Sequence record: MK054204.1
Length of the DNA: 17,195 bases
Strand: one strand, 5' to 3'
The notes under the pieces are model-generated. The model had not been told where the DNA came from, did no database searches, and saw nothing but the letters and a program-made list of their open reading frames with translations. Positions 3,207 through 17,195 of the stretch are shown here, piece by piece; positions within the stretch are counted from its first letter, which is position 1; each line of letters starts with the position of its first letter. The position numbers were made by a program, and so were the translations under genes.

Positions 3207-3454
3207 ATCCTCTCTTCCCTCACCCAATTGAAGAAGAACCCTAAGTTCACTAACCCCAGTAAGAGCGGGAATATCGCTAAATAGAAAGTAGACCCTGAGA
3301 ACGCTATATCAGTATACCCTTGGACAAAGACTAAGAACCCTATGACGCCTAAGAACGTCCCCATTAAATTTACAAGATAGTTCCTACTTATCAAACCCAC
3401 GGCCGGGAAAAGAATAGAGACTACGTAGATTACATCCCCTAACGCACTCATCAA
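3203..3454 (-). CDS. Small membrane protein, SSV1 A82 homolog
   Basis: MSALGDVIY...NWVREERI; three TM segments; first gene after a TTTATAAA promoter. Confidence 0.88.
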   Translation of the reverse strand: MMSALGDVIYVVSILFPAVGLISRNYLVNLMGTFLGVIGFLVFVQGYTDIAFSGSTFYLAIFPLLLGLVNLGFFFNWVREERI

Positions 3455-3477
3455 AANAGGAAAAAATTNATNNTGAC

Positions 3478-3491
3478 TTTATAAAGGGCCT
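3478..3491 (-). promoter_or_regulatory. T9-like promoter (TATA box TTTATAAA) for the A82-B251 operon
   Basis: AGGCCCTTTATAAA about 24 nt upstream of the A82 ATG. Confidence 0.8.
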
Positions 3492-3756
3492 ATTCAGACT
3501 TGTATATCCTATACGCTACAACCGCCGGTACANTTATCAGTACAAGTATATAGAACAGTGGGACTAGTTGTAAGATGGGTGCGTTTGAGCTTCCTACGTA
3601 TTGCGGGTTAGGATTAGTTTGCGTCACAGTACCTGAAACAGTTGTGAAAGATGGTGTGGTTAGTAGAGTGACATAACTAACAATTGGCGATAATAACGCT
3701 ATACCTAAAACGATGAAGATAGCCAAAAAAATTATTTGCTTTAAACTGATTTCCAT
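3490..3756 (-). CDS. vp3: Minor capsid protein VP3
   Basis: Two hydrophobic helices; C-terminus [25 protein letters not shown] paralogous to VP1; directly downstream of VP1. Confidence 0.92.
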
Positions 3757-3850: not shown

Positions 3851-4031
3851 GTGTGGCGTTTGTGCCGGTTACGCTAGGTGCAGTACCTGACGTTAAGCTA
3901 TTTACTTGGCTAACGATGACGGGCAATAGTACTATGCCTATAAGTATAAAGATGAATAAACCTAGAATGGCACCTATGTTAGTTGCTTCNCCCTTTCTTA
4001 GCTTTGGTCTTTGCAATAGTACTAGGCTCAT
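3768..4031 (-). CDS. vp1: Major capsid protein VP1 precursor (short leader; predicted mature N-terminus EATNIG)
   Basis: [32 protein letters not shown] (the X is a GGN codon = Gly); NAT glycosylation sequon; in-frame stop at 4038-4040 fixes the ATG at 4031. Confidence 0.94.
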
Positions 4032-4323
4032 ACTTGGTCAATAGGGGCTTATCGCTAAGCTTTTTAAACCCCTCCAGTTCTGAATTCAGAATCTGAATTT
4101 GTTTAGAGTTCTCTTTAATTTTAGCATATAACGTNCNNCCTTCNTTGTANANCTCTATGTAGCCTTNNTCNTTNANNATNCNNANNTGNCTTAGCACNGT
4201 NGCATAGCTCAAAAGCAGTGNGTGAGAGATGAGAGAAGCAGAGAGTACGTAGTTTTCCACAATAAGCTCTAAGATTTTACGCCTTAGTATCTTAGCCCTA
4301 ATCTCATTAGCGTTATAAGTCAT
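3979..4323 (-). CDS. Winged-helix (ArsR-like) protein, SSV1 B115 homolog
   Basis: [34 protein letters not shown]; ATG at 4323 overlaps the C166 stop (ATGA); many Ns inside. Confidence 0.85.
4061..4075 (-). promoter_or_regulatory. T1/T2-like capsid promoter embedded in the B115 gene
   Basis: GGAGGGGTTTAAAAA about 30 nt upstream of the vp1 ATG; resembles the SSV1 vp1 promoter. Confidence 0.75.
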
Positions 4324-4820
4324 GGCCCACCCCTTATCANTTTCACCACTTCCCAAATGAGGATGAAATTAACAATCAAAACGAAAGCCGTNANNAANGG
4401 CCCTACNNNCGGTACATTCGCTAACAATCCTATAGAAGAAGTGAATATAGATATTAGATACCCTAGCACACTATCGGTTGTCTGAAACATCCACGTTAGC
4501 CAACCTATCAGGTAAAGGATTGGGGCCAACCAACTAAAGCTAATACTGAAGAGCGTTACACCCGGTATCGTTACACCCGGCAAAGTTAGTCCCGGAAAGT
4601 TAGCCCCTAGGATACTGAACGGCGGTATAAGTGTCACGGGCCCCCATAACGTAATGGGTGGCCACCCCACAGTCCATACAATTGATGACGCTAAAGCTTG
4701 GTCAAAACTATATGAAGGTATCGGTGGAATTGACGGTGGCGTTATACCGCCGTAAGCACCTACCATTAACGCTAGAAAGACGTCAAACAATAGGACGTAT
4801 ACTATTAGCTTAGTCCCCAT
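4320..4820 (-). CDS. Membrane protein, SSV1 C166 homolog
   Basis: Start MGTKLIVYVLLFDVF at 4820 after GGTGGTAGGG gives 166 aa; Pro-rich, multiple hydrophobic segments. Confidence 0.88.
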   Translation of the reverse strand: MGTKLIVYVLLFDVFLALMVGAYGGITPPSIPPIPSYSFDQALASSIVWTVGWPPITLWGPVTLIPPFSILGANFPGLTLPGVTIPGVTLFSISFSWLAPILYLIGWLTWMFQTTDSVLGYLISIFTSSIGLLANVPXVGXXXTAFVLIVNFILIWEVVKXIRGGP

Positions 4821-5052
4821 CCCTACCACCTCCTAAGATTAACCCGGCTATCAGACCCAAAATGATCGCAACGCCCCAAAAAAGCGGTAAGAAATTCATG
4901 AAAGTTAGGGTGAAAGTTGAGGCTATACCTACAAGAATCGCCGGTACTTTGCCCGCCATCTTGTATGTTAGTCCCATCATTCCTATGATAATAACGACCG
5001 CAATNACCGGCCCTAAACCNGTNNNTAANGCNANNNNNATTGCGTCCGTCAT
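4810..5052 (-). CDS. Small membrane protein, SSV1 B78 homolog
   Basis: 80 aa, three hydrophobic segments; lies between VP4 and C166. Confidence 0.82.
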   Translation of the reverse strand: MTDAXXXXLXXGLGPXIAVVIIIGMMGLTYKMAGKVPAILVGIASTFTLTFMNFLPLFWGVAIILGLIAGLILGGGRDGD

Positions 5053-7433
5053 TATTCCTCCCTCCCCATAAACCTATCNACNANNGTNTTNGCTAANAGT
5101 ANCGCTATNCCNANNANNAAGANNTANAAGATGTACCANGGTANTANCCCNANNTATGCAGTGGCGATTAGCCCCATAACCGCACCACCCGATGCACCCG
5201 CACTACCGCCGAATTTCCAACCTAGTAACGCGATAAGTACCGTAACCACAATCCCGATGATTTCCGCCCATGGTTGGTATTGAGAGAAATTGTAAAGTGA
5301 GGAGTTAGGCAATATGTTATTACTAAACGGCTTAGTGTAGTTGTAGTTAAGAGTAGTGGTATTCACTGTGGTGGTGCTGCTTACTGTAGTAGTATTTGAA
5401 ACGCTAATGTTTAGTATCTGATATGTAACGCCGTACCAGTCTATATCTACTAACTCATAAGGACTATAGGATAGTTTTAGCGTTACGCTTCCGAAACCGG
5501 AAGCGTTTGTGTAGCCCGTTACATATTGTGTCAATGTTGATGGGTTAGTCCCGATCAATATTATATATGCTTGGTTAGCCGTAGCACTTTGTAAAACGAT
5601 ACCGCTAACGAAGAACCAATTCAGTACAAGTTTCCCCGCACCGTAGTAGAAGCCTAATCCAATAACCGGCGAAGTGTTTGATATAGTTAATACACCACCC
5701 GCACTACTGCTTATCTGAACATAGTTACCCGTTATAATCTGAAACGTTAGCGTATTAACGCTATTATTAACGAATTTTAACCCGGTTAAGGAACTATTAA
5801 ACGGAATTAGATAGTTGTTCCCGTTTTGAGTGATTATTACTAGGCCGTCATTTGCGGACAACCAATACGCTTTGAACTGAACTATAGCGTTTGTAGTTAC
5901 CATTTTAGCATAAGCAAAAGCCAAAATAGTAGATGTTTGCGTAAACGCAGATTGAGTTACGTTAGCTACGGGGCTATTATAAGTGAATTGAAACGTTATC
6001 GTTATTGTTTGCCCTAATATCCCGATTTTAGGATAAGAAGTAACGAATAACACGGGGTAACTCTGTGCGGGCAATACTGTGAAACTACCGCTATAATCTA
6101 TCATTGATATTGGGCCTTCAGTTACGATTACTGTATAGTAATAAGTAGTAGGTACTTGGACTATAGGCGTAAAACTATAGGGTATCGGGTACGTAACACC
6201 GTTTATTGATACGTTAGCCCGCTCTGATACTGCCGTATAATAACCTAGATTTGAGGGATAACCTATAATGTTAGTTAAAGTGAAACTGATTGTTTGCCCG
6301 CTTAGATAAGTCCCGCTAGGCAAATTGACGCTAGGATATAGTGCATAGCCCTCAACAATTACGGGTATAGTTAGGTTGTAGTTTATCGTTACTTGAGATG
6401 TAACGATTTGAAGCCCTATGGTTACGTTTACGTACCATGTTGGTGGGTTACCTTCGATTGGCCCCGTGTAAAGTAAATATAATCCGTTTGACTTCCCTAA
6501 AATGTTAAAAGTGCATGCTAAGCCTTGTTGTATACCCGTTATTGTAAAGTTTTTCTGTGAAACTATGCCCGATATGCTATATAATGCACCTGAAATGTTT
6601 ACGGGATTCCCCGCACCCGCATAGGCCATTAAGAAATGATAGATGTTATACGATAATGCGAAATAACTAATAGTCAGTTGTGCCGTAACTTGTGTAAAAT
6701 ATTGATAACGCATTATCACCCACTGACCGTACCCAAAACCCGGCCCAATATTCTGAGCGTCAATAACATAATTACTATTTACGGTATTCAACGATAGGCC
6801 CGGTATTATTGAAAAAGTCTTTAGAGTACCGTTATAGTAATAAACGTAAAGTTGGTTTGAAGCGGGTAAGTACCAGAACCCTAAACCTATTTGTTGCCCA
6901 ACACTGATTGAGCCCACAGACACGTTTAACTCTTTCACACCGTCAAAGTATACAAATAACCTATACGTTGGGAAACTCCCTTTTTCCATATAAACCACAA
7001 TCCCATCGGAAGCGTAAGGTAATGCGGGTGCATAGCTACCCGTAAAGCCTGAAGGGAAATTTACACCGTAGCCTATGGCGATTGAACCGTAGGATCCGGT
7101 GTTGCTAGATGAAGCTAGCAACCATGTGACGTTTAGAGCGATTTGTGATGATGAAAGAGAAAGAGATACGTTATTACTAATATATGCTTGATTCGGCAAA
7201 ACTTGGAGGTAGTAAGTGTTGTATATCGAAACGTAAGTTGGGTTAAGCCAAGGTGCATTAGAGAGCGTTGAACCGTTAAGAGTTTTACTTACTGAACCCC
7301 CATTTACCGTTATAGTTTGAGTATAAACTCCCACACCGCTATTATTAGGCCCTCCTCCACCTATAAGTAAAGCTAAGGAGTTGAGAGAAAAAAGAGATAT
7401 AAAGAAAATAGCGAATAATAGTCCCCACTTCAT
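5052..7433 (-). CDS. vp4: Adsorption/tail protein VP4, SSV1 C792 homolog
   Basis: 793 aa; signal peptide; Asn/Ser/Thr/Tyr-rich beta-type body with many N-x-S/T sequons; C-terminal TM segments; first gene of the structural operon. Confidence 0.92.
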
Positions 7434-7456
7434 TAAGCGATAAAAAATTATGTGAG

Positions 7457-7470
7457 TTTATAAAGGGCCT
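7457..7470 (-). promoter_or_regulatory. T7/T8-like promoter for the vp4 operon
   Basis: AGGCCCTTTATAAA about 24 nt upstream of the vp4 ATG (leaderless). Confidence 0.8.
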
Positions 7471-7688
7471 TAGTCTATCAAACGCCATAGTAAGTCTATT
7501 ACTGCCTTACGAAATTTGGGGCTTAAGTACATTGCAATCCCTAAAGAGGCTAAAAAAATTGCTAAGGCAATTTCCGGAGCGTATTGAACATACCATGGAG
7601 GTGGCGAATAAGGTGGCGAATAAGGAAAAATAATTTTCCCCTGAACAGATGCATTTACTGGGCCGAAATTAATACCCGAGGATGACAT
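7470..7688 (-). CDS. Small membrane-anchored protein, C124-like (PPWY motif plus TM plus basic tail); candidate immunity protein
   Basis: 72 aa, PPPWYVQYAPEIALAIFLASLGIAMYL then KFRK; own BRE/TATA 23 nt upstream of the ATG. Confidence 0.65.
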   Translation of the reverse strand: MSSSGINFGPVNASVQGKIIFPYSPPYSPPPWYVQYAPEIALAIFLASLGIAMYLSPKFRKAVIDLLWRLID

Positions 7689-7693
7689 ATAAG

Positions 7694-7700
7694 AAAAAAA
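7694..7700 (-). terminator. Oligo-T (T7) terminator of the 302-aa gene transcript
   Basis: T7 tract 27 nt downstream of the stop. Confidence 0.55.
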
Positions 7701-7710
7701 GATTAACTTG

Positions 7711-7725
7711 ATAATATACTTTTTC
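7711..7725 (-). promoter_or_regulatory. Tx-like promoter for the 72-aa membrane protein
   Basis: GAAAAAG-TATATTAT about 23 nt upstream of ATG 7688. Confidence 0.55.
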
Positions 7726-7726
7726 G

Positions 7727-8635
7727 TTAGACAATATACACTAGAATTAATGGTGTTTCTGTGTAACTAAGTTGTAAGGTTCCCGATATTTGAGCACTAC
7801 TACTTGACGTGTAGGCATTCGCGGAAAATGAAGGGCTACTGGACAACCAAGCAAAAGCCCATGCATAATTACTACTAATATAATTATTTGCGATAGGATA
7901 GTTTGTAGCGTATTTTATAGTTTCATACCCTACTGCAGTAGCGGGACTTCCAATTATGTTAAATGATATTCCGCTAAAGGTTTCGTTAGGAATTGGGTAG
8001 AACAAAATTGATTTGTTCACTCCGCTCTGGTAATAACCGGGTGCCTCACCCATCACTAGAGCAGAATATGGAGTAAAACTGATTCCGGTATTATAGGTAT
8101 ATGAAAAACTTCCATCTGAGAATTGTGCAACTACATTACCGTTAGAAAGGTAAAGATATATGTTCATAGTTGTACCCGCGAACTGGCTATACGGATATTG
8201 ATATGATACCAATGGATGAGCGTTGTTATTTACCACCAGATACACAAAAAGTAGCACGTATTTCACACTTTGATTTTCCAATAAATCAACTCCCGCTTGC
8301 AAGAAAGTTGTGCTTGCCCCATTACCAATAGTATACGGTGAAAGAGCCACCCAAAAGGCATACATGTTATCATACCAGTATTCATTAGGATTATAATAAT
8401 ATGGTATTGAAGATGGGATTGGCACAGAGATTGAGGCATATGAAGCCGGTTGCACTTGACCGTTATTAGCAAACTCAAACACATACCCTAAAAGGTTTGA
8501 ATCAGTTGATGATGAAATTTGATTTATCGGTATCGGTGATGATGGCGGTATTATTACTCCTGCAATTGTTGGAGTTATTAAAAGCGATAGTAACGCTAGG
8601 GATAGGGTTAGAAGGGCTAGAAGGGACTTTCTCAT
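7727..8635 (-). CDS. Secreted protein at the SSV1 A291 position; putative G1 (eqolisin-like) glutamic peptidase, toxin candidate
   Basis: Signal peptide MRKSLLALLTLSLALLSLLITPTIA; motifs SNLLGYV, AFWVAL, FLQAGVD, ALVMGEAP; no C-terminal anchor seen. Confidence 0.7.
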   Translation of the reverse strand: MRKSLLALLTLSLALLSLLITPTIAGVIIPPSSPIPINQISSSTDSNLLGYVFEFANNGQVQPASYASISVPIPSSIPYYYNPNEYWYDNMYAFWVALSPYTIGNGASTTFLQAGVDLLENQSVKYVLLFVYLVVNNNAHPLVSYQYPYSQFAGTTMNIYLYLSNGNVVAQFSDGSFSYTYNTGISFTPYSALVMGEAPGYYQSGVNKSILFYPIPNETFSGISFNIIGSPATAVGYETIKYATNYPIANNYISSNYAWAFAWLSSSPSFSANAYTSSSSAQISGTLQLSYTETPLILVYIV

Positions 8636-8658
8636 TTGGAATAGAGGAAAAATAGAAC

Positions 8659-8672
8659 TTTACAAAGGGCCT
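8659..8672 (-). promoter_or_regulatory. T3-like promoter for the 302-aa secreted protein
   Basis: AGGCCCTTTGTAAA about 24 nt upstream of ATG 8635. Confidence 0.65.
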
Positions 8673-9048
8673 AACTAACGCAGATATTATGTTTTTTGCA
8701 AACATGGTCTAGGGTTGAATCAGTGTTTCTAAACTCCTTTTTGCATATGGGACAAGTCTTTGCATGCTCGGTGTATCGGATGTGTTGTTTCAGACTAACT
8801 GATGAAGAAAATGGCATTAAGCAAAGGGGACAGACGTAAGGCGATACTGCTTTACTTGTCAGTAACTTATAGAGATAACCGCTTTCATCTAACAACTGGG
8901 GGTTATGGATTAACGCTTTAACAATAGCCCTAATTATTCTTTTCTGTTCCGGCGTCAGACTGTGGTATCGTTCCAGTTCTTCTAAAGTCACGTGAATCGT
9001 AATCCCCTTATGGTTACTCCTCAGGTGCGTTTTACTGCCTGACTCCAT
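8671..9048 (-). CDS. Tandem C2H2 zinc-finger protein, SSV1 B129 homolog
   Basis: CPLC..HIRYTEH and CPIC..HVCKKH; ATG at 9048 after GGAGGG. Confidence 0.9.
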   Translation of the reverse strand: MESGSKTHLRSNHKGITIHVTLEELERYHSLTPEQKRIIRAIVKALIHNPQLLDESGYLYKLLTSKAVSPYVCPLCLMPFSSSVSLKQHIRYTEHAKTCPICKKEFRNTDSTLDHVCKKHNICVS

Positions 9049-9650
9049 TCCTATCCCTCCAACAGTAGTTGTAAAACGCACACTCTAGGCATTCACTATC
9101 AGGCTTAACTTTTTTCGGCGGTAAGATGTTTTCCTCAACTGAAATCCCGAAAGCGTTAGCCCTAGCCTCTAAGTCAGTCTCTGAATAATCACGTTTAATC
9201 TCTTCCACCCTACCATCCGCATACACGATTATTAAATACCCCGCCATAGCATTAGCCATTTCAATGTAATAGTTAAGTTGTCTGAGGTAGTTGTTGAGCC
9301 TAACGTTATCCAGTGATTGCTGATGCGTATACTTCAACTCGTAAACCGTTTGCTCTTCTTTGTCGTAAACGTCCACTTTGCCTACTATTTGAAACCCTAA
9401 AGCCGTCTTCCGTTCAACCCTCTTTTCAACCTCAAAGCCATGCTTTNCTAAGTATTGATTGCAAACGCATATGAAGACCTGAACCTATGTGCATCCTCAT
9501 TGTAGTTTGTAAATTCTGTTTTATTTTACCGTTATGTCTCATTAGAAAACTTTGTCGAAGGCATCTACTAAGCTCAGTAACCCAGATCGTCTTAGTATCG
9601 TTAGTAGTTATCATTTCATAATTATATAATATATCAATGAGTCTNCTCAT
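9032..9650 (-). CDS. cas4: Cas4-like (RecB-family, Fe-S) nuclease; apparent frameshift at N 9447 is probably artefactual
   Basis: Track ORFs 9432-9650 and 9032-9376 join on removing the N at 9447 (205 aa). Motifs RC, GSGLH, GKVD, YELK, QLNYY and CLECAFYNYC all present. Confidence 0.85.
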
Positions 9651-9946
9651 NNTTTNCTCGCCCTCTTATGCCTCCTAATCGTCAAAGTATTCCAACAAAC
9701 TACAAACGCCTCTATCACACTATCATAATAAATCATCGATGTGGGGGCAAAGTGCAATACTAAAATTGTTATAAGAAGTAACGTAGCTAAAGAAAATTTA
9801 TAGAACGCTAATCGCAAAGGCGTTTCAATGAATTTCCTNGCAATTGCATTAACCTCTCTCACTCCCTCAATTCTAAGCCCTAATACCGTTGTAAAATAAT
9901 CGTTAAAGTGCATACCATAGAATGCTAATAATTCCGCTATCATCAT
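9647..9946 (-). CDS. Membrane protein, SSV1 C102-like
   Basis: FNDYFTTVLGL...E.NA...LRLAFYKF pattern; ATGA overlaps at both ends. Confidence 0.78.
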   Translation of the reverse strand: MMIAELLAFYGMHFNDYFTTVLGLRIEGVREVNAIXRKFIETPLRLAFYKFSLATLLLITILVLHFAPTSMIYYDSVIEAFVVCWNTLTIRRHKRAXKX

Positions 9947-10074
9947 TCTCTCACCCTGAAGTANANATAGAAATATTCTAGCGTAAACTTGCTCTGCATA
10001 TGCCCACTAAGCAAATGCTCAACCACTTCCCTTCTTTTCCTAAATATACCGCCACAACGTAGACACTGATACAT
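9943..10074 (-). CDS. C2H2 zinc-finger protein, SSV1 A45 homolog (43 aa; not in the ORF track)
   Basis: Hand translation MYQCLRCGGIFRKRREVVEHLLSGHMQSKFTLEYFYxYFRVRE; TAATG and ATGA coupling to its neighbours. Confidence 0.88.
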   Translation of the reverse strand: MYQCLRCGGIFRKRREVVEHLLSGHMQSKFTLEYFYXYFRVRE

Positions 10075-11803: not shown

Positions 11804-12178
11804 TTATTTCTTTATATTACTGGTGTGATACCCAATTCCGAAGGGAATAAAGTCTCTTAGTCTGAATCTATTAATGTTGAACACCATCCTATCCTCTAGA
11901 TAACATTGAGCCAACTTAAGACACTGATGCACCTCCTCCAACACCTTTCTTGCTTTTTCATCCAAGATCATTATATCTGAATAAGGTATATGAACATGAT
12001 AACGGCCCTTACGAGGATTATAGACGGCGTAAAGCATCCAGTCAGTCCTATCCCTAAAAATCACCACAGACCCAACCGGGGTTATTGCCACCCAATTCAA
12101 GTTATCCCAATTGATATGTTTCGAAATACTAAAGCCGTGAGTCCTAATTATAAGCATTAACTGTTCTTGATTCTCCAC
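11804..12178 (-). CDS. Hypothetical protein, last gene of the replication-like operon
   Basis: GTG start after GGGTGAGGGG; overlaps the end of the 681-aa gene. Confidence 0.65.
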   Translation of the reverse strand: MENQEQLMLIIRTHGFSISKHINWDNLNWVAITPVGSVVIFRDRTDWMLYAVYNPRKGRYHVHIPYSDIMILDEKARKVLEEVHQCLKLAQCYLEDRMVFNINRFRLRDFIPFGIGYHTSNIKK

Positions 12179-14202
12179 TTCCCCTCACCCGCCTCCTCTA
12201 TTATATCCAGTTTTTTCAGGATATCCCTCCATAACTCTTGACTCCTAGGGTCTGTAGCTTGAACAGTATACTCTAATATCTTGCTTAACTCATCGTCAAT
12301 AATGATATCTTTACCCAATAGCTTCGATCTCACATAGTTTATCAACATTTCATCTATATCGTAGCTTGAATGGATTTCCTGATTCTCATCTATCTCCTCC
12401 TCCAATTCCGCGAGGACTTTCAACCCGTAATGTGATAAAGCCCATGAGAACTTCTTACCATCATAAGCTTTCCATAATAACCCCTTATCGTAAAGAGCAT
12501 CCAAGAGCTTTTTAGTTTCTTGTGTACTCATTTTGATAATTTGGGCAACCTCTGATGTTGTCACGTCCTTAGTTTCCTCATCTTTCTCTCCTTGTATAAA
12601 TCCGTGATCAAGCAACCATCTCAATAACTGCAAATCCCTTTCCGACAACTCCAGTGTTGTCAATATAATATCCTTCTTGAAATAACGCATCACAAAATTC
12701 ACATCTTCCTCTTTTACCTCTTCATGCCCGTACATAGACGCGGTAGCTCTGACTAAATTCCTTGTAATCTCCGTTGCACGATAGATGTTCTTAAAGTTGA
12801 TAAACTTCTTGAGGAGTTCGATAACCTTTAAACCTATAGAGTCCGTAAATACCGGGTCGTTGGGCCTCGTTTTTAACCAGACATATGCGATAAGCTTCAG
12901 TCTAGAAAACTTTTCATCGTCTATACTCTTCCTCATCAAGATTGTACTAATAATTTTTTCCTTGATACTCTCATCTTCTACCGGTGAAAGGTAGAGTTGG
13001 ATTGAACGATTAGTGATTTGATGGTCAACATTTGCGGTCACGTTAGTCGTGATAAAAGTTGGTTGTCCCGGGATCACTTTTTGTATTGTCTTTATTTCCC
13101 CGGTTTCAGTCTTTACCGGGACTAGCGTTGTTATTCTACCCTCACTCATTGCTTCCCTTAAATAGCTTACCCCTTCAACATTATCCAATTGTTCGATGAA
13201 CAATACCTTACCGTCTAATGTGCCGATATCGAGATACCCTAGACTCTCTTTTGTTATTCTTGTAACATTAAGAACAACCCAATCATCCACTCCATCATTC
13301 ATCTCATAAAACATCTTTAAAATAGATTTGATCGTTGAGGACTTACCTACACCGGAACTACCCGTTAAGATTAAGTGAACACGGTATATCCCGAAGAGCT
13401 TCTTTAACTGTGAGGAAATTACGCTCAGTAGCACCGCAACCTTAAGCTTCTCATTCCCTACGACTTCGGAAGCTCTCGAGAGGAAGAAGCCTAAGGGATC
13501 ACGGTTTATCTCCTCCCACTCTTCATACCTTTTCACCACCTCACGTACGTCTGTCCATTGTATATATTTTTCTGGTTCTATTCGTTCTAACCATACATCG
13601 AGAGCATCGCTAATTAGTTGCTTAGAGATATGTCTTTGGCCTCTGAACGTGTAAAGCTTCTCTACAATCTCTTTCTTATTCCTAATATAGTATATTGTTT
13701 TGCCCTCAACCTTATAGAAGTCCACAGTAGTCAATAGACTCAAAGTTTCATTCTTCTTTTTGGCCACAAGTTCAAATTGAGGAAGTTGAGGTAACTTGAG
13801 GTCTATAATTCTAGTACTGTCCTCAATTGTTCCAGCGAAACCATAGTATATTTCAAATTTTGTTTTGTTCTTACCCTTGATTATTATCATATTATCTTTA
13901 ATTTCAATATTTTCATCTTCAATTTCTTTCTCCTCTTCTGCTAAAAATTCTCCGGAAGTATTTGGAGAGATAGAGGAATTTGTGTCGTTTGTGTCGCTTT
14001 TGAATTTTTCTCGTGTGTCGCTTACTAAATTGGGCGACACAAACGACACATTTTCATTATACCCTTTCTGAACTTCCGGAGAATTTTTATCAAACGACAC
14101 TTCATTTTTTGAATTATTTTGTGTCGCTGAGTTATTATTTCCGTCTTTATTTTTCTTTAATTTTTCTTGGACAATCCTCCTAAGCGTTTCCCTATCAACC
14201 AT
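12157..14202 (-). CDS. MCM-like AAA+ ATPase with C-terminal winged helix (putative replicative helicase/initiator)
   Basis: Walker A GSSGVGKS; Walker B variant VLFIEQLD; LREAMSEGRITT; sensor-1 FITTN; NRS arginine finger; C-terminal TTSEVAQ...LYDKGLL wHTH. Confidence 0.75.
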   Translation of the reverse strand: MVDRETLRRIVQEKLKKNKDGNNNSATQNNSKNEVSFDKNSPEVQKGYNENVSFVSPNLVSDTREKFKSDTNDTNSSISPNTSGEFLAEEEKEIEDENIEIKDNMIIIKGKNKTKFEIYYGFAGTIEDSTRIIDLKLPQLPQFELVAKKKNETLSLLTTVDFYKVEGKTIYYIRNKKEIVEKLYTFRGQRHISKQLISDALDVWLERIEPEKYIQWTDVREVVKRYEEWEEINRDPLGFFLSRASEVVGNEKLKVAVLLSVISSQLKKLFGIYRVHLILTGSSGVGKSSTIKSILKMFYEMNDGVDDWVVLNVTRITKESLGYLDIGTLDGKVLFIEQLDNVEGVSYLREAMSEGRITTLVPVKTETGEIKTIQKVIPGQPTFITTNVTANVDHQITNRSIQLYLSPVEDESIKEKIISTILMRKSIDDEKFSRLKLIAYVWLKTRPNDPVFTDSIGLKVIELLKKFINFKNIYRATEITRNLVRATASMYGHEEVKEEDVNFVMRYFKKDIILTTLELSERDLQLLRWLLDHGFIQGEKDEETKDVTTSEVAQIIKMSTQETKKLLDALYDKGLLWKAYDGKKFSWALSHYGLKVLAELEEEIDENQEIHSSYDIDEMLINYVRSKLLGKDIIIDDELSKILEYTVQATDPRSQELWRDILKKLDIIEEAGEGKWRIKNS
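13942..14127. repeat. Nested inverted repeats plus GTGTCG iteron cluster (candidate replication origin)
   Basis: 18-bp IR at 13942-13959/14072-14089 and 17-bp IR at 13981-13997/14034-14050 share centre 14015.5; seven GTGTCG/CGACAC copies. Confidence 0.85.
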
Positions 14203-15909
14203 TTAGGCCACCTCTAAACCCATCAACCTCTTCACGTTAGCATAACCGAACCTCTTATCAATCAAGTAAATTGTTGCATTGTCTTGCGGACCACGGATAG
14301 CCCTCCCTATCGCTTGTTTAACCTTAATTATAGCCTTCTCATATAATACAGTCCATTTGAAACTATTAGGATCTTTGTTCACCCTTTTCACAACTACTTC
14401 AATCATCTTGTCCAAGTAAGGGTCTTTGTACTCCGGCAGAGGTAGACCAACAACGAATATTGCCTTAATCCTACTCCTTCCTTGATCGTCTAAAACTTCA
14501 ATTCCTTCACTTAATTTCCCACCCGCAACTGCGAAAATTATTGAACCGTTAGGCAACTTTTTTACCCTATCAAGCACATCCGGTCTAACATCTTCGAAAA
14601 ACGAATCCATAAACAGATATCTATAAGCCTCTAACTCCTCGTAACTCGGTAAAATAACTAAGTTTAACCCGTCTTTTGAAGTATATTGCCTAATAATCTG
14701 AGCGACTTTTTGCCTATACTCTTTCCTTTTCACTTTGATATACTCCACATTATCCTCAAGGTAGATTTTCGCCCCATTAAAGTGGTTACTTAGAGACGTG
14801 GAGTTCCATAGGTTTAGAGCGTTGATGTACTCAAAGTTGTTGAGACCCCATACGGTTTTGATATAATCCTTTGAGGGCATCGTACCGCTCAAAAGAATAT
14901 ACCTATAATTATTTAGTTGAGATAGCCACAACGAGGGGTCTGCGGGCATCGTTTTAATATATTCTCCATTCTGTGTATCCCTTTCAATATAATAATCATC
15001 TTTTTTTGCCCACGCTTTATTTACTGCTTTGAACTTTGCTTGTAGTTCCTCATCTAAATACCCGGTATAGGAAAAACCGTTATCCGGATCCTTCACAAAT
15101 TCCCTGAATTCCTTAACTACTTTCTCCTTTACTCTCTCAGGATCCAAACCCTCAATAATGACTTTACTAAAGTACCTCTCTATCTCTTTCACCGTAAGCG
15201 TTATACTATTAATATTAAAGTCGTCAAGGTTATGTGCCTCATCAAAAATTATTATATCAAAAAGATCCTCATCCGGTTTCCTAATACCTAAGAAGAAATA
15301 GATGTAACTATATATCCTAATATCCGCCGTATTACCATCGATTAGGTCTCTAGCACATATACTATATTTCCTTCCATCTACATTGATTTCATTGTCCCTG
15401 AACCAGTTAGCGGTACCTTTTATCCCTACTTGTTTTAACATAGCGTTAAGCGTGTTTGTCACTGTAATCGTAAGTCTCCCTACTTCTTCTTCCATTTCAC
15501 GAAGTCTGTATCTACAGAAAGTTAAACTATCAGGGTCATAACATTTAGGGTTGAGATACTTCCTTTCTATAAACTTTTTATGCATTGTTACATGTTCTAT
15601 ATCGTCGACTTCTTTTGCACATTTTGTGCACCATAAAACGTACGGCTTCTTCATGACCTTGCAATATTCTCCTTTCCTCATAAGCCCGCCGAAGCTCATA
15701 CCCAACTTGTTTGCGTCCCTTTCCCAACTACTATATTGGCTTATGGTTCTGACATAAACGTAACCTTGCTTCTCCAGACGTCGCAACGTCTCCAACGCTA
15801 TAATTGTTTTGCCGGTTCCCGTTGGAGCATTAATAACTACACTGCGACCGTTGCTTAGAGCTTCTACGGCTTTCTTTATAATAACTTCTTGATAATCCCT
15901 AAGTATCAT
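14203..15909 (-). CDS. XPD/Rad3/DinG-family SF2 helicase
   Basis: Q motif LRDYQ; Walker A APTGTGKT; Cys-rich insert; DEAH; LLSGT; LSEGIE; VGLP; motif VI KQAIGRAIRG. Confidence 0.92.
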   Translation of the reverse strand: MILRDYQEVIIKKAVEALSNGRSVVINAPTGTGKTIIALETLRRLEKQGYVYVRTISQYSSWERDANKLGMSFGGLMRKGEYCKVMKKPYVLWCTKCAKEVDDIEHVTMHKKFIERKYLNPKCYDPDSLTFCRYRLREMEEEVGRLTITVTNTLNAMLKQVGIKGTANWFRDNEINVDGRKYSICARDLIDGNTADIRIYSYIYFFLGIRKPDEDLFDIIIFDEAHNLDDFNINSITLTVKEIERYFSKVIIEGLDPERVKEKVVKEFREFVKDPDNGFSYTGYLDEELQAKFKAVNKAWAKKDDYYIERDTQNGEYIKTMPADPSLWLSQLNNYRYILLSGTMPSKDYIKTVWGLNNFEYINALNLWNSTSLSNHFNGAKIYLEDNVEYIKVKRKEYRQKVAQIIRQYTSKDGLNLVILPSYEELEAYRYLFMDSFFEDVRPDVLDRVKKLPNGSIIFAVAGGKLSEGIEVLDDQGRSRIKAIFVVGLPLPEYKDPYLDKMIEVVVKRVNKDPNSFKWTVLYEKAIIKVKQAIGRAIRGPQDNATIYLIDKRFGYANVKRLMGLEVA

Positions 15910-17002: not shown

Positions 17003-17195
17003 TTGGGCGAAAAGCAACGTAGATATAAATTCGGCGATTATCTCTTGAGGGAAAGAAAAGGCCGGTATTACGTCTATAAGTTGGAAACGATAAACGGTGA
17101 GATAAAGGAGCGTTACGTTGGCCCTTTAACTGACGTTGTTGAANCNTATCTAAAAGAAAAAGAGGGGGTATTAGGGGGATTCCTCCCCCTAACAA
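17003..17195 (+). CDS. int: SSV-type integrase, N-terminal part int(N); not in the ORF track
   Basis: TTG start after GTGAGAGG; [47 protein letters not shown] resembles the SSV1 integrase N-terminus; 193 nt plus bases 1-2 restore the frame into int(C). Confidence 0.93.
17171..17192. repeat. 9-bp hairpin immediately before att
   Basis: TTAGGGGGA-TTCC-TCCCCCTAA. Confidence 0.8.

What the first reader, a model, noticed from the sequence alone, without database searches (positions are those of the whole stretch)
7457..8672. Two-gene cassette (secreted protein plus small membrane protein): candidate toxin/immunity pair
Seen: the 302-aa gene and the 72-aa TM gene each have their own leaderless promoter, with a T7 tract between them. 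The pair is bracketed by near-identical 14-bp sequences TTTA(T/C)AAAGGGCCT (7457-7470, 8659-8672). Inference: separate transcription would let immunity be expressed independently of the toxin, and the flanking motif could let the cassette swap between viruses as a unit.
Basis: inference. Interest (0 to 1): 0.75.

Follow-up and report, generated by a model that had tools for sequence, protein, structure and literature searches.

The report
Fusellovirus secreted killer-toxin locus
This is the SSV12 copy of the already published spindle-virus "toxin locus": a secreted killer protein gene followed by a small membrane-protein gene, which published tests on the equivalent genes of other SSVs suggest is not an immunity gene, and the flanking 14-bp repeats are promoter cores.

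Summary
The window is the complete genome of Sulfolobus spindle-shaped virus SSV12 (MK054204).

- **Large gene:** the 302-aa gene is a homologue of SSV1 A-291 (35% identity). It is also related to the SSV11-p29 toxin type. Published experiments support both as secreted growth-inhibiting toxins.
- **Small gene:** the 72-aa gene belongs to the small membrane-protein family that always sits just upstream of the tail-fibre gene VP4 (SSV1 C-124, "Gene 2").
- **14-bp repeats:** these are the TATA-box cores of the T3 and T4 promoters. A third copy is the T9 promoter. In SSV1 the equivalent RNAs, T3 and Tx, are mapped as separate leaderless monocistronic transcripts.
- **Cassette borders:** similarity between viruses does break at these promoters. 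SSV15 has lost both genes and keeps one hybrid promoter.
- **Immunity:** this half is not supported. Published tests of four other alleles of the small gene showed no protection, whereas expressing the toxin alone did protect. My comparisons show that the two genes can recombine independently.

Verdict: a correct rediscovery of a system published in 2022 and 2026. The toxin reading is supported, the immunity reading is unlikely, and novelty is low.

The parts
8671..9081 (-). B-129-type C2H2 zinc-finger gene (last gene of the upstream T6-like unit). Its stop codon TAG (8671-8673) overlaps the promoter motif.
   Evidence: Pfam B129_C2H2-zf, E 1e-14. 82% identical to SSV1 B-129. Sequence context.
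8659..8672 (-). T3-type promoter core, AGGCCCTTTGTAAA on the minus strand. The TATA box is at 8659-8666, which is -31..-24 from the ATG at 8635.
   Evidence: Aligns with the SSV1 T3 promoter, whose TSS (7851) is mapped 1 nt before the A-291 ATG. The motif precedes the toxin gene in all 15 compared SSVs that have one.
7727..8635 (-). 302-aa secreted toxin gene of the A-291 family. It encodes a Sec signal peptide (residues 1-25, TIA|G) and a mature all-beta protein of 30.3 kDa with pI 4.1.
   Evidence: BLASTP against SSV1 A-291 gives E 4e-18. hhalign against the p29 type gives 98% probability. The AF2 model has pLDDT 82.9 and a beta-sandwich fold.
8561..8635 (-). Signal-peptide codons. They belong to the conserved left flank shared by different toxin alleles.
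   Evidence: Nucleotide similarity to SSV1, SSV2, SSV7, Lassen, NL01B and SSVRH runs from 8674 to 8588 (to 8561 for SSV1) and then stops. The MRK..LL.L.L signal peptide is the only stretch conserved across alleles.
7471..8587 (-). Hypervariable cassette: the mature toxin domain plus the small gene.
   Evidence: blastn breakpoints against 10 SSVs.
7711..7718 (-). TATA-like box TATATTAT, preceded by a purine-rich GAAAAAG. This is the candidate Tx-type promoter of the 72-aa gene, at -30..-23.
   Evidence: Sequence. It occupies the same position as SSV1 pTx, which is mapped at the A of the c124 ATG. This is an inference for SSV12.
7694..7700 (-). T7 run, the likely terminator of the toxin transcript. 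It lies between the TATA box and the start codon of the 72-aa gene.
   Evidence: SSV1 tT3 (8752) lies in the equivalent T-rich spacer.
7470..7688 (-). 72-aa small membrane protein of the C-124 / 'Gene 2' family. It has a variable N-terminal tail with an N-glycosylation sequon, a PPPWY motif, a TM helix (37-55) and a YLSPKFRK amphipathic tail.
   Evidence: BLASTP against the SSV1 C-124 C-terminus gives E 2e-6. All-versus-all comparison of small proteins. Family alignment. AF2 model with the helix at pLDDT above 90.
7457..7470 (-). T4-type promoter core of the VP4 gene, AGGCCCTTTATAAA. The TATA box is at 7457-7464. The stop codon of the 72-aa gene (7470-7472) overlaps it.
   Evidence: Aligns with the SSV1 T4 promoter (TSS 9173, 1 nt before the C-792 ATG). 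Conserved in 16 of 16 SSVs.
5052..7433 (-). VP4 (C-792) end-filament gene, the first gene of the T4/7/8-like unit.
   Evidence: The first 120 residues are 85% identical to those of SSV1 C-792. Annotation of SSV1 and SSV7.
3478..3491 (-). Third copy of the motif, the T9-type promoter in front of the A-82 homologue.
   Evidence: Aligned with SSV1 pT9 (TSS 13551).

Best explanation
**What it is.** The region is the SSV12 version of the fusellovirus T3/Tx 'toxin locus'.

**The toxin gene (partly shown, partly inferred).**
- The 302-aa gene is transcribed from the T3 promoter as a leaderless mRNA. In SSV1 this RNA is constitutive and abundant.
- The product is exported by the host Sec system and its signal peptide is cleaved after Ala25.
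- It is released as a 30-kDa, acid-stable beta-sandwich protein with a concanavalin/lectin/GH16-like fold.
- It then inhibits or kills neighbouring Sulfolobus cells that do not carry the same virus. The target is most probably a cell-envelope component.
- The fold and the homology are shown here. The activity is inferred from homologues. The biochemical mechanism is unknown, because no catalytic residues are conserved.

**The small gene (function inferred).**
- The T7 run ends the toxin RNA. The 72-aa gene has its own leaderless promoter, wrapped around that terminator.
- It makes a single-pass membrane protein. Its short, variable, probably glycosylated N-terminus faces outward. Its transmembrane helix and basic tail are highly conserved.
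- The producer is most likely protected by expressing the toxin itself (precursor self-immunity, as in yeast killer viruses), not by the 72-aa protein.
- The small protein more likely serves the neighbouring VP4 / virion-end or cell-surface function.

**The cassette.** The mature-toxin and small-gene segment is a recombination hot spot. It is bounded by conserved promoter modules: the T3 promoter plus signal-peptide codons on one side, and the T4 promoter plus the VP4 5' end on the other. Homologous exchange in these flanks swaps alleles. Crossover between the two promoter cores deletes the cassette.
For: **Identity of the window**
- The window is MK054204, SSV12.

**Homology of the 302-aa protein**
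- It matches SSV1 A-291 at E 4e-18.
- An A-291-clade profile matches a p29-type profile at 98% probability, E 2e-13, with no sequences shared between the two alignments.
- Only 11 cluster representatives exist among 1.8 billion proteins. The homologues that carry a source name come from Saccharolobus genomes (proviruses).

**Experiments on homologues**
- SSV1 a291 deletions and the A25L/L26A cleavage-site mutant lose halo formation but still replicate and form virions.
- SSV9 B310 and SSV11 p29 are toxic when expressed alone, and expressing B310 protects the cell.

**Structure**
- The AF2 model has pLDDT 82.9 and pTM 0.81 and is all-beta.
- Foldseek hits are a lectin-like protein, neprosin, GH16 glucanases (including 3AXD) and galectins.

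**Transcription**
- SSV1 T3 runs 7851-8752 and carries a291 only. Tx runs 8766-9172 and carries c124 only. T4/7/8 starts at 9173.
- The SSV12 promoters align with the SSV1 ones.

**Cassette borders**
- The right breakpoint falls at 7467-7478 in 9 of 10 genomes. The left breakpoint falls at 8670 or at 8588/8561.
- SSV15 has one hybrid promoter and neither gene. Its left and right matches to SSV17, SSV13 and SSV14 overlap on the promoter segment.
- SSVRH has a duplicated T4 promoter plus an extra small gene.

**Small protein**
- It shares the PPPWY-TM-YLSPxxR module with other small genes and has a confident TM helix.
Against: - No experiment exists for the SSV12 allele. It is only 35-39% identical to A-291 and shows no detectable sequence relation to B310 (hhalign 21.6%).
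- One tested allele, SSV13 p30, had no effect on uninfected lawns.
- TM-scores to solved structures are low (0.3-0.5). No catalytic motif is conserved, and the GH16 ExDxxE motif is absent in all alleles. 'Hydrolase' therefore remains unproven.
- In SSV9 the two genes were described as lying on one T3 transcript from RNA-seq coverage, so read-through past the T-run may occur.
- The proposed role of the small protein is only an inference from its position and architecture.
Confidence: 0.72

Rival explanations
1. A true two-gene toxin/immunity pair. The 72-aa membrane protein would neutralise or exclude the cognate 302-aa toxin at the producer's membrane. Its own promoter would allow immunity to be made without toxin.
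For: - The genes are adjacent, point the same way and have separate promoters.
- At the level of broad allele types the small gene is usually linked to the toxin type (Pearson 0.77 over 91 pairs; also stated in PMC8628083).
- The outward-facing N-terminus of the small protein is hypervariable, as expected for a specificity determinant.
Against: **Published tests of other alleles**
- C108 alone gave no protection, whereas B310 alone did.
- The second genes of SSV11 and SSV13 had no effect.
- SSV1 with a transposon insertion in c124 still makes halos.
- The SSV1 a291-c124 double deletion behaves like the a291 deletion.

**Natural experiment**
- SSV13- and SSV14-infected lawns carry a 111-aa small gene identical to that of SSV17, yet B310 kills them.

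**Discordant divergence (toxin % identity / small-protein % identity)**
- L018: 75/35.
- L019: 46/74.
- SSV12 versus M.06.0.8v2: 98/81.
Confidence: 0.1
2. Neither product is a toxin. Both would be accessory virion-end or egress proteins working with VP4: a lectin-like adhesin plus its membrane anchor.
For: - The genes sit immediately upstream of VP4.
- The fold resembles lectins and phage tailspike or receptor-binding modules.
- The secreted protein has no anchor, while the small protein is a membrane anchor with a conserved TM and tail.
- An older hypothesis gave the SSV2 gene at this position a docking or release role (quoted).
Against: - SSV1 a291 and a291-c124 deletion mutants still make normal virions and replicate.
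- Toxin-only expression vectors reproduce the killing.
- SSV15 lacks both genes yet was recovered as a free virus.
Confidence: 0.1
3. The 14-bp repeats are only promoters. Their coincidence with similarity breakpoints would be a by-product of purifying selection on promoters next to fast-evolving genes, not evidence that crossovers happen there.
For: - The motif is also at the T9 promoter, which is not next to a variable cassette.
- The left breakpoint is usually after the signal-peptide codons, not at the motif.
- Within the SSV12 clade, variation comes as small intragenic patches.
Against: - The SSV15 junction is exactly the left flank of T3p, then the repeat, then the right flank of T4p.
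- SSVRH carries a duplicated T4 promoter bordering an inserted gene.
- SSV12 and SSV13 are 94-99% identical right up to both motifs and unrelated between them.
Confidence: 0.3

Closest known systems
SSV1 ORF A-291 (T3 transcript) and ORF C-124 (Tx transcript)
   Same: - Same position between B-129 and VP4.
- Nearly identical signal peptide, with 35-39% identity over the whole protein.
- Same promoter cores and the same TATA-to-ATG geometry.
- The small protein shares the PPWY + TM module.
   Different: - The mature domain is strongly diverged.
- The SSV12 small protein has 72 aa against 124 aa and lacks the N-terminal hydrophobic segment.
- The Tx-type promoter sequence differs.
- The SSV1 antisense pT3E promoter is not recognisable in SSV12.
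SSV9 B310 / SSV11 p29 / SSV13 p30 'Gene 1' toxins with 'Gene 2/3' small genes (DeWerff et al. 2022, PMC8628083)
   Same: - Same locus, size, signal peptide and downstream small TM gene.
- The p29 type is a detectable homologue.
   Different: - The B310 type has no detectable sequence similarity.
- Those viruses carry an extra C113 membrane-protein gene between B129 and the T3 promoter, which SSV12 lacks.
Yeast killer-virus toxins (K1, K28)
   Same: A persistent virus encodes a secreted protein toxin that kills virus-free neighbours, and the producer is protected by the toxin precursor itself. DeWerff et al. draw this analogy.
   Different: Unrelated sequence and fold; a dsRNA virus of a eukaryote; the processing pathway is known there and unknown here.
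Sulfolobicins (SulA/SulB) and bacteriocin/colicin toxin-immunity operons
   Same: Secreted protein antagonists of close relatives, encoded as adjacent genes.
   Different: - Sulfolobicins are host-encoded and vesicle-associated.
- Colicin-type systems have a dedicated cognate immunity protein. Published tests of the equivalent small genes of other SSVs did not find one.
Concanavalin-like beta-sandwich proteins (GH16 glucanases, galectins, glutamic peptidase neprosin)
   Same: Same overall fold class by Foldseek, E 4e-5 to 1e-3. 3AXD, the published top match for A-291, is among the hits.
   Different: - TM-scores are only 0.3-0.5.
- The GH16 ExDxxE motif is absent.
- There is no Pfam, NCBIfam or PDB sequence match.
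- The source labels 'Thermopsin' and 'Peptidase A4 family' could not be reproduced.

Membership tests
Fusellovirus secreted toxin ('Gene 1': A-291 / p29 / B310) | Lies directly downstream of the T3 promoter, between the B129 gene and the VP4 gene | tested here: met
Fusellovirus secreted toxin ('Gene 1': A-291 / p29 / B310) | About 300 aa with a conserved N-terminal Sec signal peptide and no TM anchor | tested here: met
   The signal peptide MRKSLLALLTLSLALLSLLITPTIA|G is almost identical to that of A-291. The rest of the AF2 model is one beta domain. No SignalP-type tool was available.
Fusellovirus secreted toxin ('Gene 1': A-291 / p29 / B310) | Sequence homology to an experimentally supported toxin | tested here: met
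   A-291 at E 4e-18. p29-type profile at 98% probability. Not met for the B310 type (21.6%).
Fusellovirus secreted toxin ('Gene 1': A-291 / p29 / B310) | Beta-sheet 'hydrolase-like' fold | tested here: met
   3AXD is hit at E 4.5e-4. Only the fold class is shown, not an active site.
Fusellovirus secreted toxin ('Gene 1': A-291 / p29 / B310) | Cell-free supernatant inhibits lawns of uninfected cells | not testable with these tools
   Shown only for homologues.
Toxin / cognate immunity (antitoxin) gene pair | The second gene alone protects against the first gene's product | not testable with these tools
   Published tests of four other alleles were negative.
Toxin / cognate immunity (antitoxin) gene pair | The two genes are inherited and diverge together | tested here: inconclusive
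   They are correlated overall (r 0.77), but there are clear discordant pairs and patch replacement in one gene only.
SSV small membrane protein upstream of VP4 (C-124 / C108 / B74, 'Gene 2') | Last gene before the T4 promoter, with a Pro-rich PPPWY/PPSP motif, a TM helix and a Y(L/F)SPxxR basic tail | tested here: met
SSV1 T3/T4/T9-class leaderless BRE/TATA promoters | TATA box about 24-31 nt upstream of the start codon, with the TSS at or 1 nt before the ATG | tested here: met
   The geometry and the alignment to mapped SSV1 sites are met. The TSS itself is not mapped in SSV12.
GH16 glycoside hydrolase | Catalytic ExDxxE / ExDxE strand motif | tested here: not met
   Absent from all 10 alleles checked. 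No Pfam hit.
Glutamic peptidase (G1/A4) or thermopsin (A5) | Match to the family profile, and a conserved catalytic Gln/Glu-Glu pair | tested here: not met
   No Pfam, NCBIfam or PDB sequence hit even at E 10. Q113 and E197 are conserved in part of the clade but are replaced in SSV1 (E and S).

The most novel reading that the evidence does not exclude
The cassette could be a genuine two-part killer module after all. The 72-aa protein, through its hypervariable outward-facing tail, would act as an allele-specific docking or protection factor that works only together with the toxin precursor. Single-gene tests would then have missed it. The whole unit would be moved, swapped or cleanly deleted between co-infecting viruses by crossovers in the duplicated promoter cores.
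Probability: 0.1. Interest if true: 0.6.

Novelty: already known. Interest (0 to 1): 0.25.

Why it matters
Virus-encoded secreted toxins give chronically infected Sulfolobus a competitive edge, and they explain the long-puzzling 'plaques' of non-lytic spindle viruses. This locus is that system in SSV12.

What this analysis adds is modest:
- The SSV12 allele belongs to the A-291 clade and is mis-annotated as a truncated gene in GenBank.
- The 'border' repeats are the T3/T4/T9 promoter cores.
- The comparative data show a promoter-delimited cassette that can be swapped or precisely lost, as in SSV15.
- The small gene recombines independently of the toxin, which weakens the antitoxin idea further.

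The mechanism of killing and the basis of producer immunity remain open questions for the whole family.

Tried and rejected
- **Family and sequence searches.** Pfam, NCBIfam and PDB-sequence searches with the single protein and with the family alignment found nothing, even at E 10. PHROGs gave only 'unknown function' families.
- **tblastn.** At collection scale it found only the five near-identical Kamchatka viruses, so wider comparisons had to be made on fetched loci.
- **Protease lead.** The source names 'Thermopsin' and 'Peptidase A4 family' suggested an acid protease. No profile match supports this, and the candidate Gln/Glu pair is not conserved in SSV1. Neprosin appears only as one of many beta-sandwich fold hits.
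- **GH16 glucanase.** The catalytic motif is absent.
- **Relation to VP4.** BLASTP found no similarity between the toxin and VP4.
- **Relation to B310.** Sequence homology to the B310-type toxin was not detectable. A first hhalign run was discarded because one sequence was in both alignments, and it was repeated without overlap.
- **Antisense RNA.** I looked for an SSV12 equivalent of the SSV1 antisense RNA T3E. No TATA-like box lies at the homologous position. This is a weak negative.
- **Viral structure library.** It gave no informative match.
Full report
**What the window is.** The 1.6-kb region matches MK054204.1 at 100% identity. That record is Sulfolobus spindle-shaped virus strain SSV12, a complete circular genome of 17,195 bp from a cell-free virus preparation from Mutnovsky volcano, Kamchatka. 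All genes of the finding are on the minus strand. In the direction of transcription the order is:
- a B-129-type zinc-finger gene (8671..9081; Pfam B129_C2H2-zf);
- the 302-aa gene (7727..8635);
- the 72-aa gene (7470..7688);
- the 793-aa VP4/C-792 end-filament gene (5052..7433).

**Check of the observation.**
- The two ORFs, the T7 run between them (A7 on the + strand, 7694-7700) and the two 14-bp sequences are all present as described.
- A third exact copy of the motif lies at 3478-3491. That gives three matches against 0.41 expected, and 1 of 200 shuffles reached three.
- Read on the coding strand the motif is AGGCCC-TTT(A/G)TAAA. In the two copies of the finding it starts exactly 24 nt from a start codon (7433 and 8635). 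The third copy lies 24 nt from a TTG at 3454 and 27 nt from the annotated ATG at 3451.
- The motif is therefore a TATA box with its upstream flank. In each case the stop codon of the preceding gene overlaps its first bases.

**What the motif is.**
- The SSV1 record X07234 carries experimentally mapped transcript starts. T3 starts 1 nt before the A-291 ATG, T4 starts 1 nt before the C-792 ATG, and T9 starts 1 nt before the A-82 ATG. Each has 'box A' 23-29 nt upstream.
- The three SSV12 copies align with these three SSV1 promoters.
- A 2026 cappable-seq study of SSV1 gives base-resolution units. T6 ends at 7850. T3 runs 7851-8752 (902 nt, a291 only). Tx runs 8766-9172 (407 nt, c124 only, starting at the A of the ATG). 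T4/7/8 starts at 9173 (bioRxiv 10.64898/2026.06.17.732947, supplement).
- In the homologous locus the two genes are therefore separate, leaderless, monocistronic RNAs. Each terminator sits between the TATA box and the start site of the next promoter.
- SSV12 has the same layout. A TATATTAT box (7711-7718, at -30..-23) lies behind a purine-rich stretch, followed by the T7 run and then the ATG at 7688.
- The small genes of all other alleles show the same 'A/T-rich box, T-run, ATG' pattern.
The start sites are not mapped in SSV12 itself. For SSV9 the two genes were described as sharing the T3 transcript on the basis of RNA-seq coverage.

**The 302-aa protein.**
- It is 35% identical to SSV1 A-291 over its full length (E 4e-18), and the first 22 residues are nearly identical.
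- The family is tiny. There are 8 clusters in 5.8 billion proteins and 11 representatives in 1.8 billion; those that carry a source name come from Saccharolobus genomes, that is, proviruses.
- A profile of the A-291 clade matches a profile of the SSV2/SSV7/Lassen/Yellowstone/SSV13 type (the 'SSV11 p29' type). The match has 98% probability and E 2e-13 over 186 columns, with no sequence shared between the two alignments.
- The B310 type (SSV17 p29) shows no significant sequence relation.
- Across all allele types only the signal peptide is conserved.
- AlphaFold2 with 13 homologues gives a confident all-beta model (pLDDT 82.9, pTM 0.81). The signal peptide is a separate helix and there is no membrane anchor.
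- Foldseek places the model in the concanavalin-like beta-sandwich class. Hits are a fungal lectin-like protein (3.6e-5), the glutamic peptidase neprosin (9.5e-5), GH16 beta-glucanases including 3AXD (about 1e-4 to 5e-4), galectins and phage tailspike modules. TM-scores are only 0.3-0.5.
- The GH16 catalytic motif is absent from every allele. No Pfam, NCBIfam or PDB sequence match exists.
- The mature protein is 30.3 kDa with pI 4.1, has three N-glycosylation sequons and very few charged residues. That composition is what I would expect of an extracellular protein of an acidophile (my inference).

**What is published about this locus.**
- DeWerff et al. [quoted passage not shown] SSV9 B310 and SSV11 p29 were each sufficient when expressed from a plasmid.
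- The same authors explicitly hypothesised that the downstream small TM gene (C108) is the antitoxin, and they tested it. C108 alone did not protect, while B310 alone did. The second genes of SSV11 and SSV13 had no effect.
- They proposed self-immunity by the unprocessed toxin, as in yeast killer viruses. They suggested that the small genes act in the context of the virion because they lie next to the tail-fibre gene.
- Abshier et al. 2026 (PMC13431529) showed that SSV1 a291 is required for halo formation but not for replication or virion formation, and that swapping the residues at the signal-peptide cleavage site (A25L/L26A) abolishes the effect.
- They also showed that the a291-c124 double deletion behaves like the a291 deletion, and that an insertion in c124 does not change halos. 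[quoted passage not shown]
The toxin half is supported and the immunity half has so far failed.

**The 72-aa protein.**
- It aligns with the C-terminal third of SSV1 C-124 (E 2e-6).
- It also aligns with the small proteins of all other alleles through a shared module: a Pro-rich PPPWY/PPSP motif, a TM helix, then Y(L/F)SPxxR and a basic tail.
- Among its closer relatives the TM helix and tail are almost invariant. The N-terminal part is replaced wholesale, ranging from 0 to about 80 residues and often carrying N-glycosylation sequons.
- AF2 gives a disordered N-terminus, a confident helix at 37-55 and a second amphipathic helix at 57-71.
- With the basic residues after the helix, the N-terminus is predicted to face outward. 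This follows from the positive-inside rule and is an inference.

- I extracted the B129-to-VP4 interval from 16 SSV genomes, and took toxin/small-gene pairs from three further contigs.
- Broad allele types are usually linked. Identity of the mature toxin and identity of the small protein correlate over 91 pairs built from 14 of these toxin/small-gene pairs (Pearson 0.77, Spearman 0.44).
- Clear exceptions exist (toxin % identity / small-protein % identity):
  - a metagenomic relative, L018: 75/35;
  - an S. islandicus contig, L019: 46/74;
  - SSV17 versus SSV13: 22/100;
  - SSV12 versus M.06.0.8v2 or M.04.0.13: 96-98/81.
- In the last case a 49-nt patch (7614-7662) encoding the outward-facing tail has been replaced.
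- The genes are therefore linked by proximity but can recombine apart.
- A natural experiment in the published data points the same way. SSV13, SSV14 and SSV17 encode an identical 111-aa small protein. Yet lawns infected with SSV13, or with SSV14 (whose toxin gene has lost its start codon), are strongly inhibited by B310.

**Breakpoints and the cassette idea.**
- All 16 genomes have the AGGCCCTTTATAAA(G) core both in front of the toxin gene (where one is present) and in front of VP4.
- Against SSV12, nucleotide similarity coming from the VP4 side ends at 7467-7478 in 9 of 10 genomes. That is the upstream edge of the T4 core.
- From the B129 side, similarity ends at 8670. There many viruses carry an extra 110-113-aa membrane-protein gene (C113), inserted between the B129 stop codon and the T3 core.
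- Similarity then resumes over the T3 promoter and the signal-peptide codons (8674..8588; to 8561 in SSV1) before it disappears.
- SSV12 and SSV13 are 94-99% identical up to both promoters and unrelated in between.
- SSV15 has no toxin gene and no small gene. It carries a single promoter whose left flank is the end of C113 (as at the T3 promoter of SSV17 and SSV13) and whose right flank is that of the T4 promoter. Its two matches to the toxin-bearing genomes overlap on that promoter segment. This is the product expected from a crossover between the direct repeats TTAGGCCCTTTATAAAGT.
- SSVRH carries a duplicated T4 promoter bordering an extra small gene.
Two corrections apply. The motif is conserved because it is a promoter, and the effective left homology usually includes the signal-peptide codons.

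**Most likely mechanism.**
- *Shown here:* the gene identities, the promoter architecture, the fold class, the cassette borders and the independent recombination of the two genes.
- *Inferred from homologues:* constitutive T3 transcription, Sec export with cleavage after Ala25, release of a heat- and acid-stable 30-kDa protein that inhibits neighbouring Sulfolobus cells, and protection of the producer by toxin expression itself.
- *Unknown:* the biochemical activity. A lectin-like binder of an envelope component is as compatible with the data as a hydrolase.
- *The small protein:* I favour a role at the membrane or virion end linked to VP4, with a variable exposed tail. This is a weak inference.

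**Novelty.** The system is already published for the family. The 2026 paper collected the putative toxins of all 38 available SSV genomes. SSV12 is not named in either text, and its allele has not been tested. The points that I did not find in the papers read are the identification of the repeats as the T3/T4/T9 promoter cores, the SSV15 hybrid-promoter deletion, the fine-scale discordance between the two genes, and the failure of the protease and glucanase motif tests. These are incremental.

Noticed in passing
window 7727-8655 and 5052-7488: The GenBank record mis-annotates both genes. The toxin CDS is truncated to 7727..8236 (169 aa), and antisense ORFs 8212..8331 and 8509..8655 are called as genes. 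VP4 is truncated to 5052..7334, and an ORF at 7345..7488 that lies partly inside the full-length VP4 reading frame is called as a separate gene. Promoter geometry and the conserved signal peptides support the long forms (starts at 8635 and 7433).
   Followed up: yes
window 3457-3533, 3990-4409, 5005-5154, 9447-9966, 17144-17146: Clusters of IUPAC ambiguity codes, seen as X in translations, for example in the VP4 C-terminal anchor and in the T9 promoter spacer. The deposited SSV12 sequence looks like a consensus of a mixed virus population with polymorphic hot spots.
   Followed up: partly
window 12157-15909 (-): Two large accessory genes that most of the other SSV records fetched here lack. 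One is a 568-aa XPD/Rad3-like helicase (Helicase_C_2 1.5e-23, ResIII, DEAD_2). The other is a 681-aa P-loop protein with a weak MCM-like hit. Genes of the same size and layout (1884-nt and about 1450-nt CDSs) are annotated in M.04.0.13, and a 1884-nt CDS in SSV14.
   Followed up: partly
window 9032-9650 (-): The Cas4-like gene appears split. ORF 9032..9376 matches only the C-terminal half of Cas_Cas4, and a separate 72-aa ORF lies at 9432..9650. Relatives have one gene of about 205 aa (for example L004 9080-9697). Ambiguous bases lie in this stretch.
   Followed up: no
window 8670; L007, L009-L016: Many SSVs carry a 110-113-aa multi-TM gene (C113) inserted exactly between the B129 stop codon and the T3 promoter core, with TTAGG on both sides. 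SSV12, SSV1 and SSV2 lack it.
   Followed up: partly
window 8000-8039, 7731-7751, 7614-7662: Within the otherwise 96-99% identical SSV12 clade, differences are packed into three short replaced patches. These are a toxin surface loop (residues about 199-212, which includes the lowest-confidence loop of the mature domain in the model, residues 201-207), the toxin C-terminus, and the outward-facing tail of the 72-aa protein. This looks like gene conversion or diversifying selection.
   Followed up: partly
L012 (SSVRH) about 1035-1430: SSVRH has a duplicated T4 promoter, identical up to the position of the VP4 ATG. The duplication is followed by an extra 77-82-aa small TM gene (C82) and a second T4 promoter in front of VP4.
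   Followed up: partly
L019 (S. islandicus contig JADAML010000031) 2460-4300: A toxin + small-gene pair is followed by a T4-type promoter, a 61-aa B129 fragment, a C113-like gene and another T3 promoter with the start of a second toxin gene. This looks like a rearranged or tandem provirus remnant, joined at the promoter repeats.
   Followed up: no
window 7552-7558 (-): A second T7 run lies inside the 72-aa ORF (codons for AIFLA). It could cause premature termination of the small-gene RNA.
   Followed up: no
window 8280-8340 (+): The TATA box of the SSV1 antisense RNA T3E, which has been proposed as an RNA antitoxin, has no counterpart at the homologous position in SSV12.
   Followed up: partly
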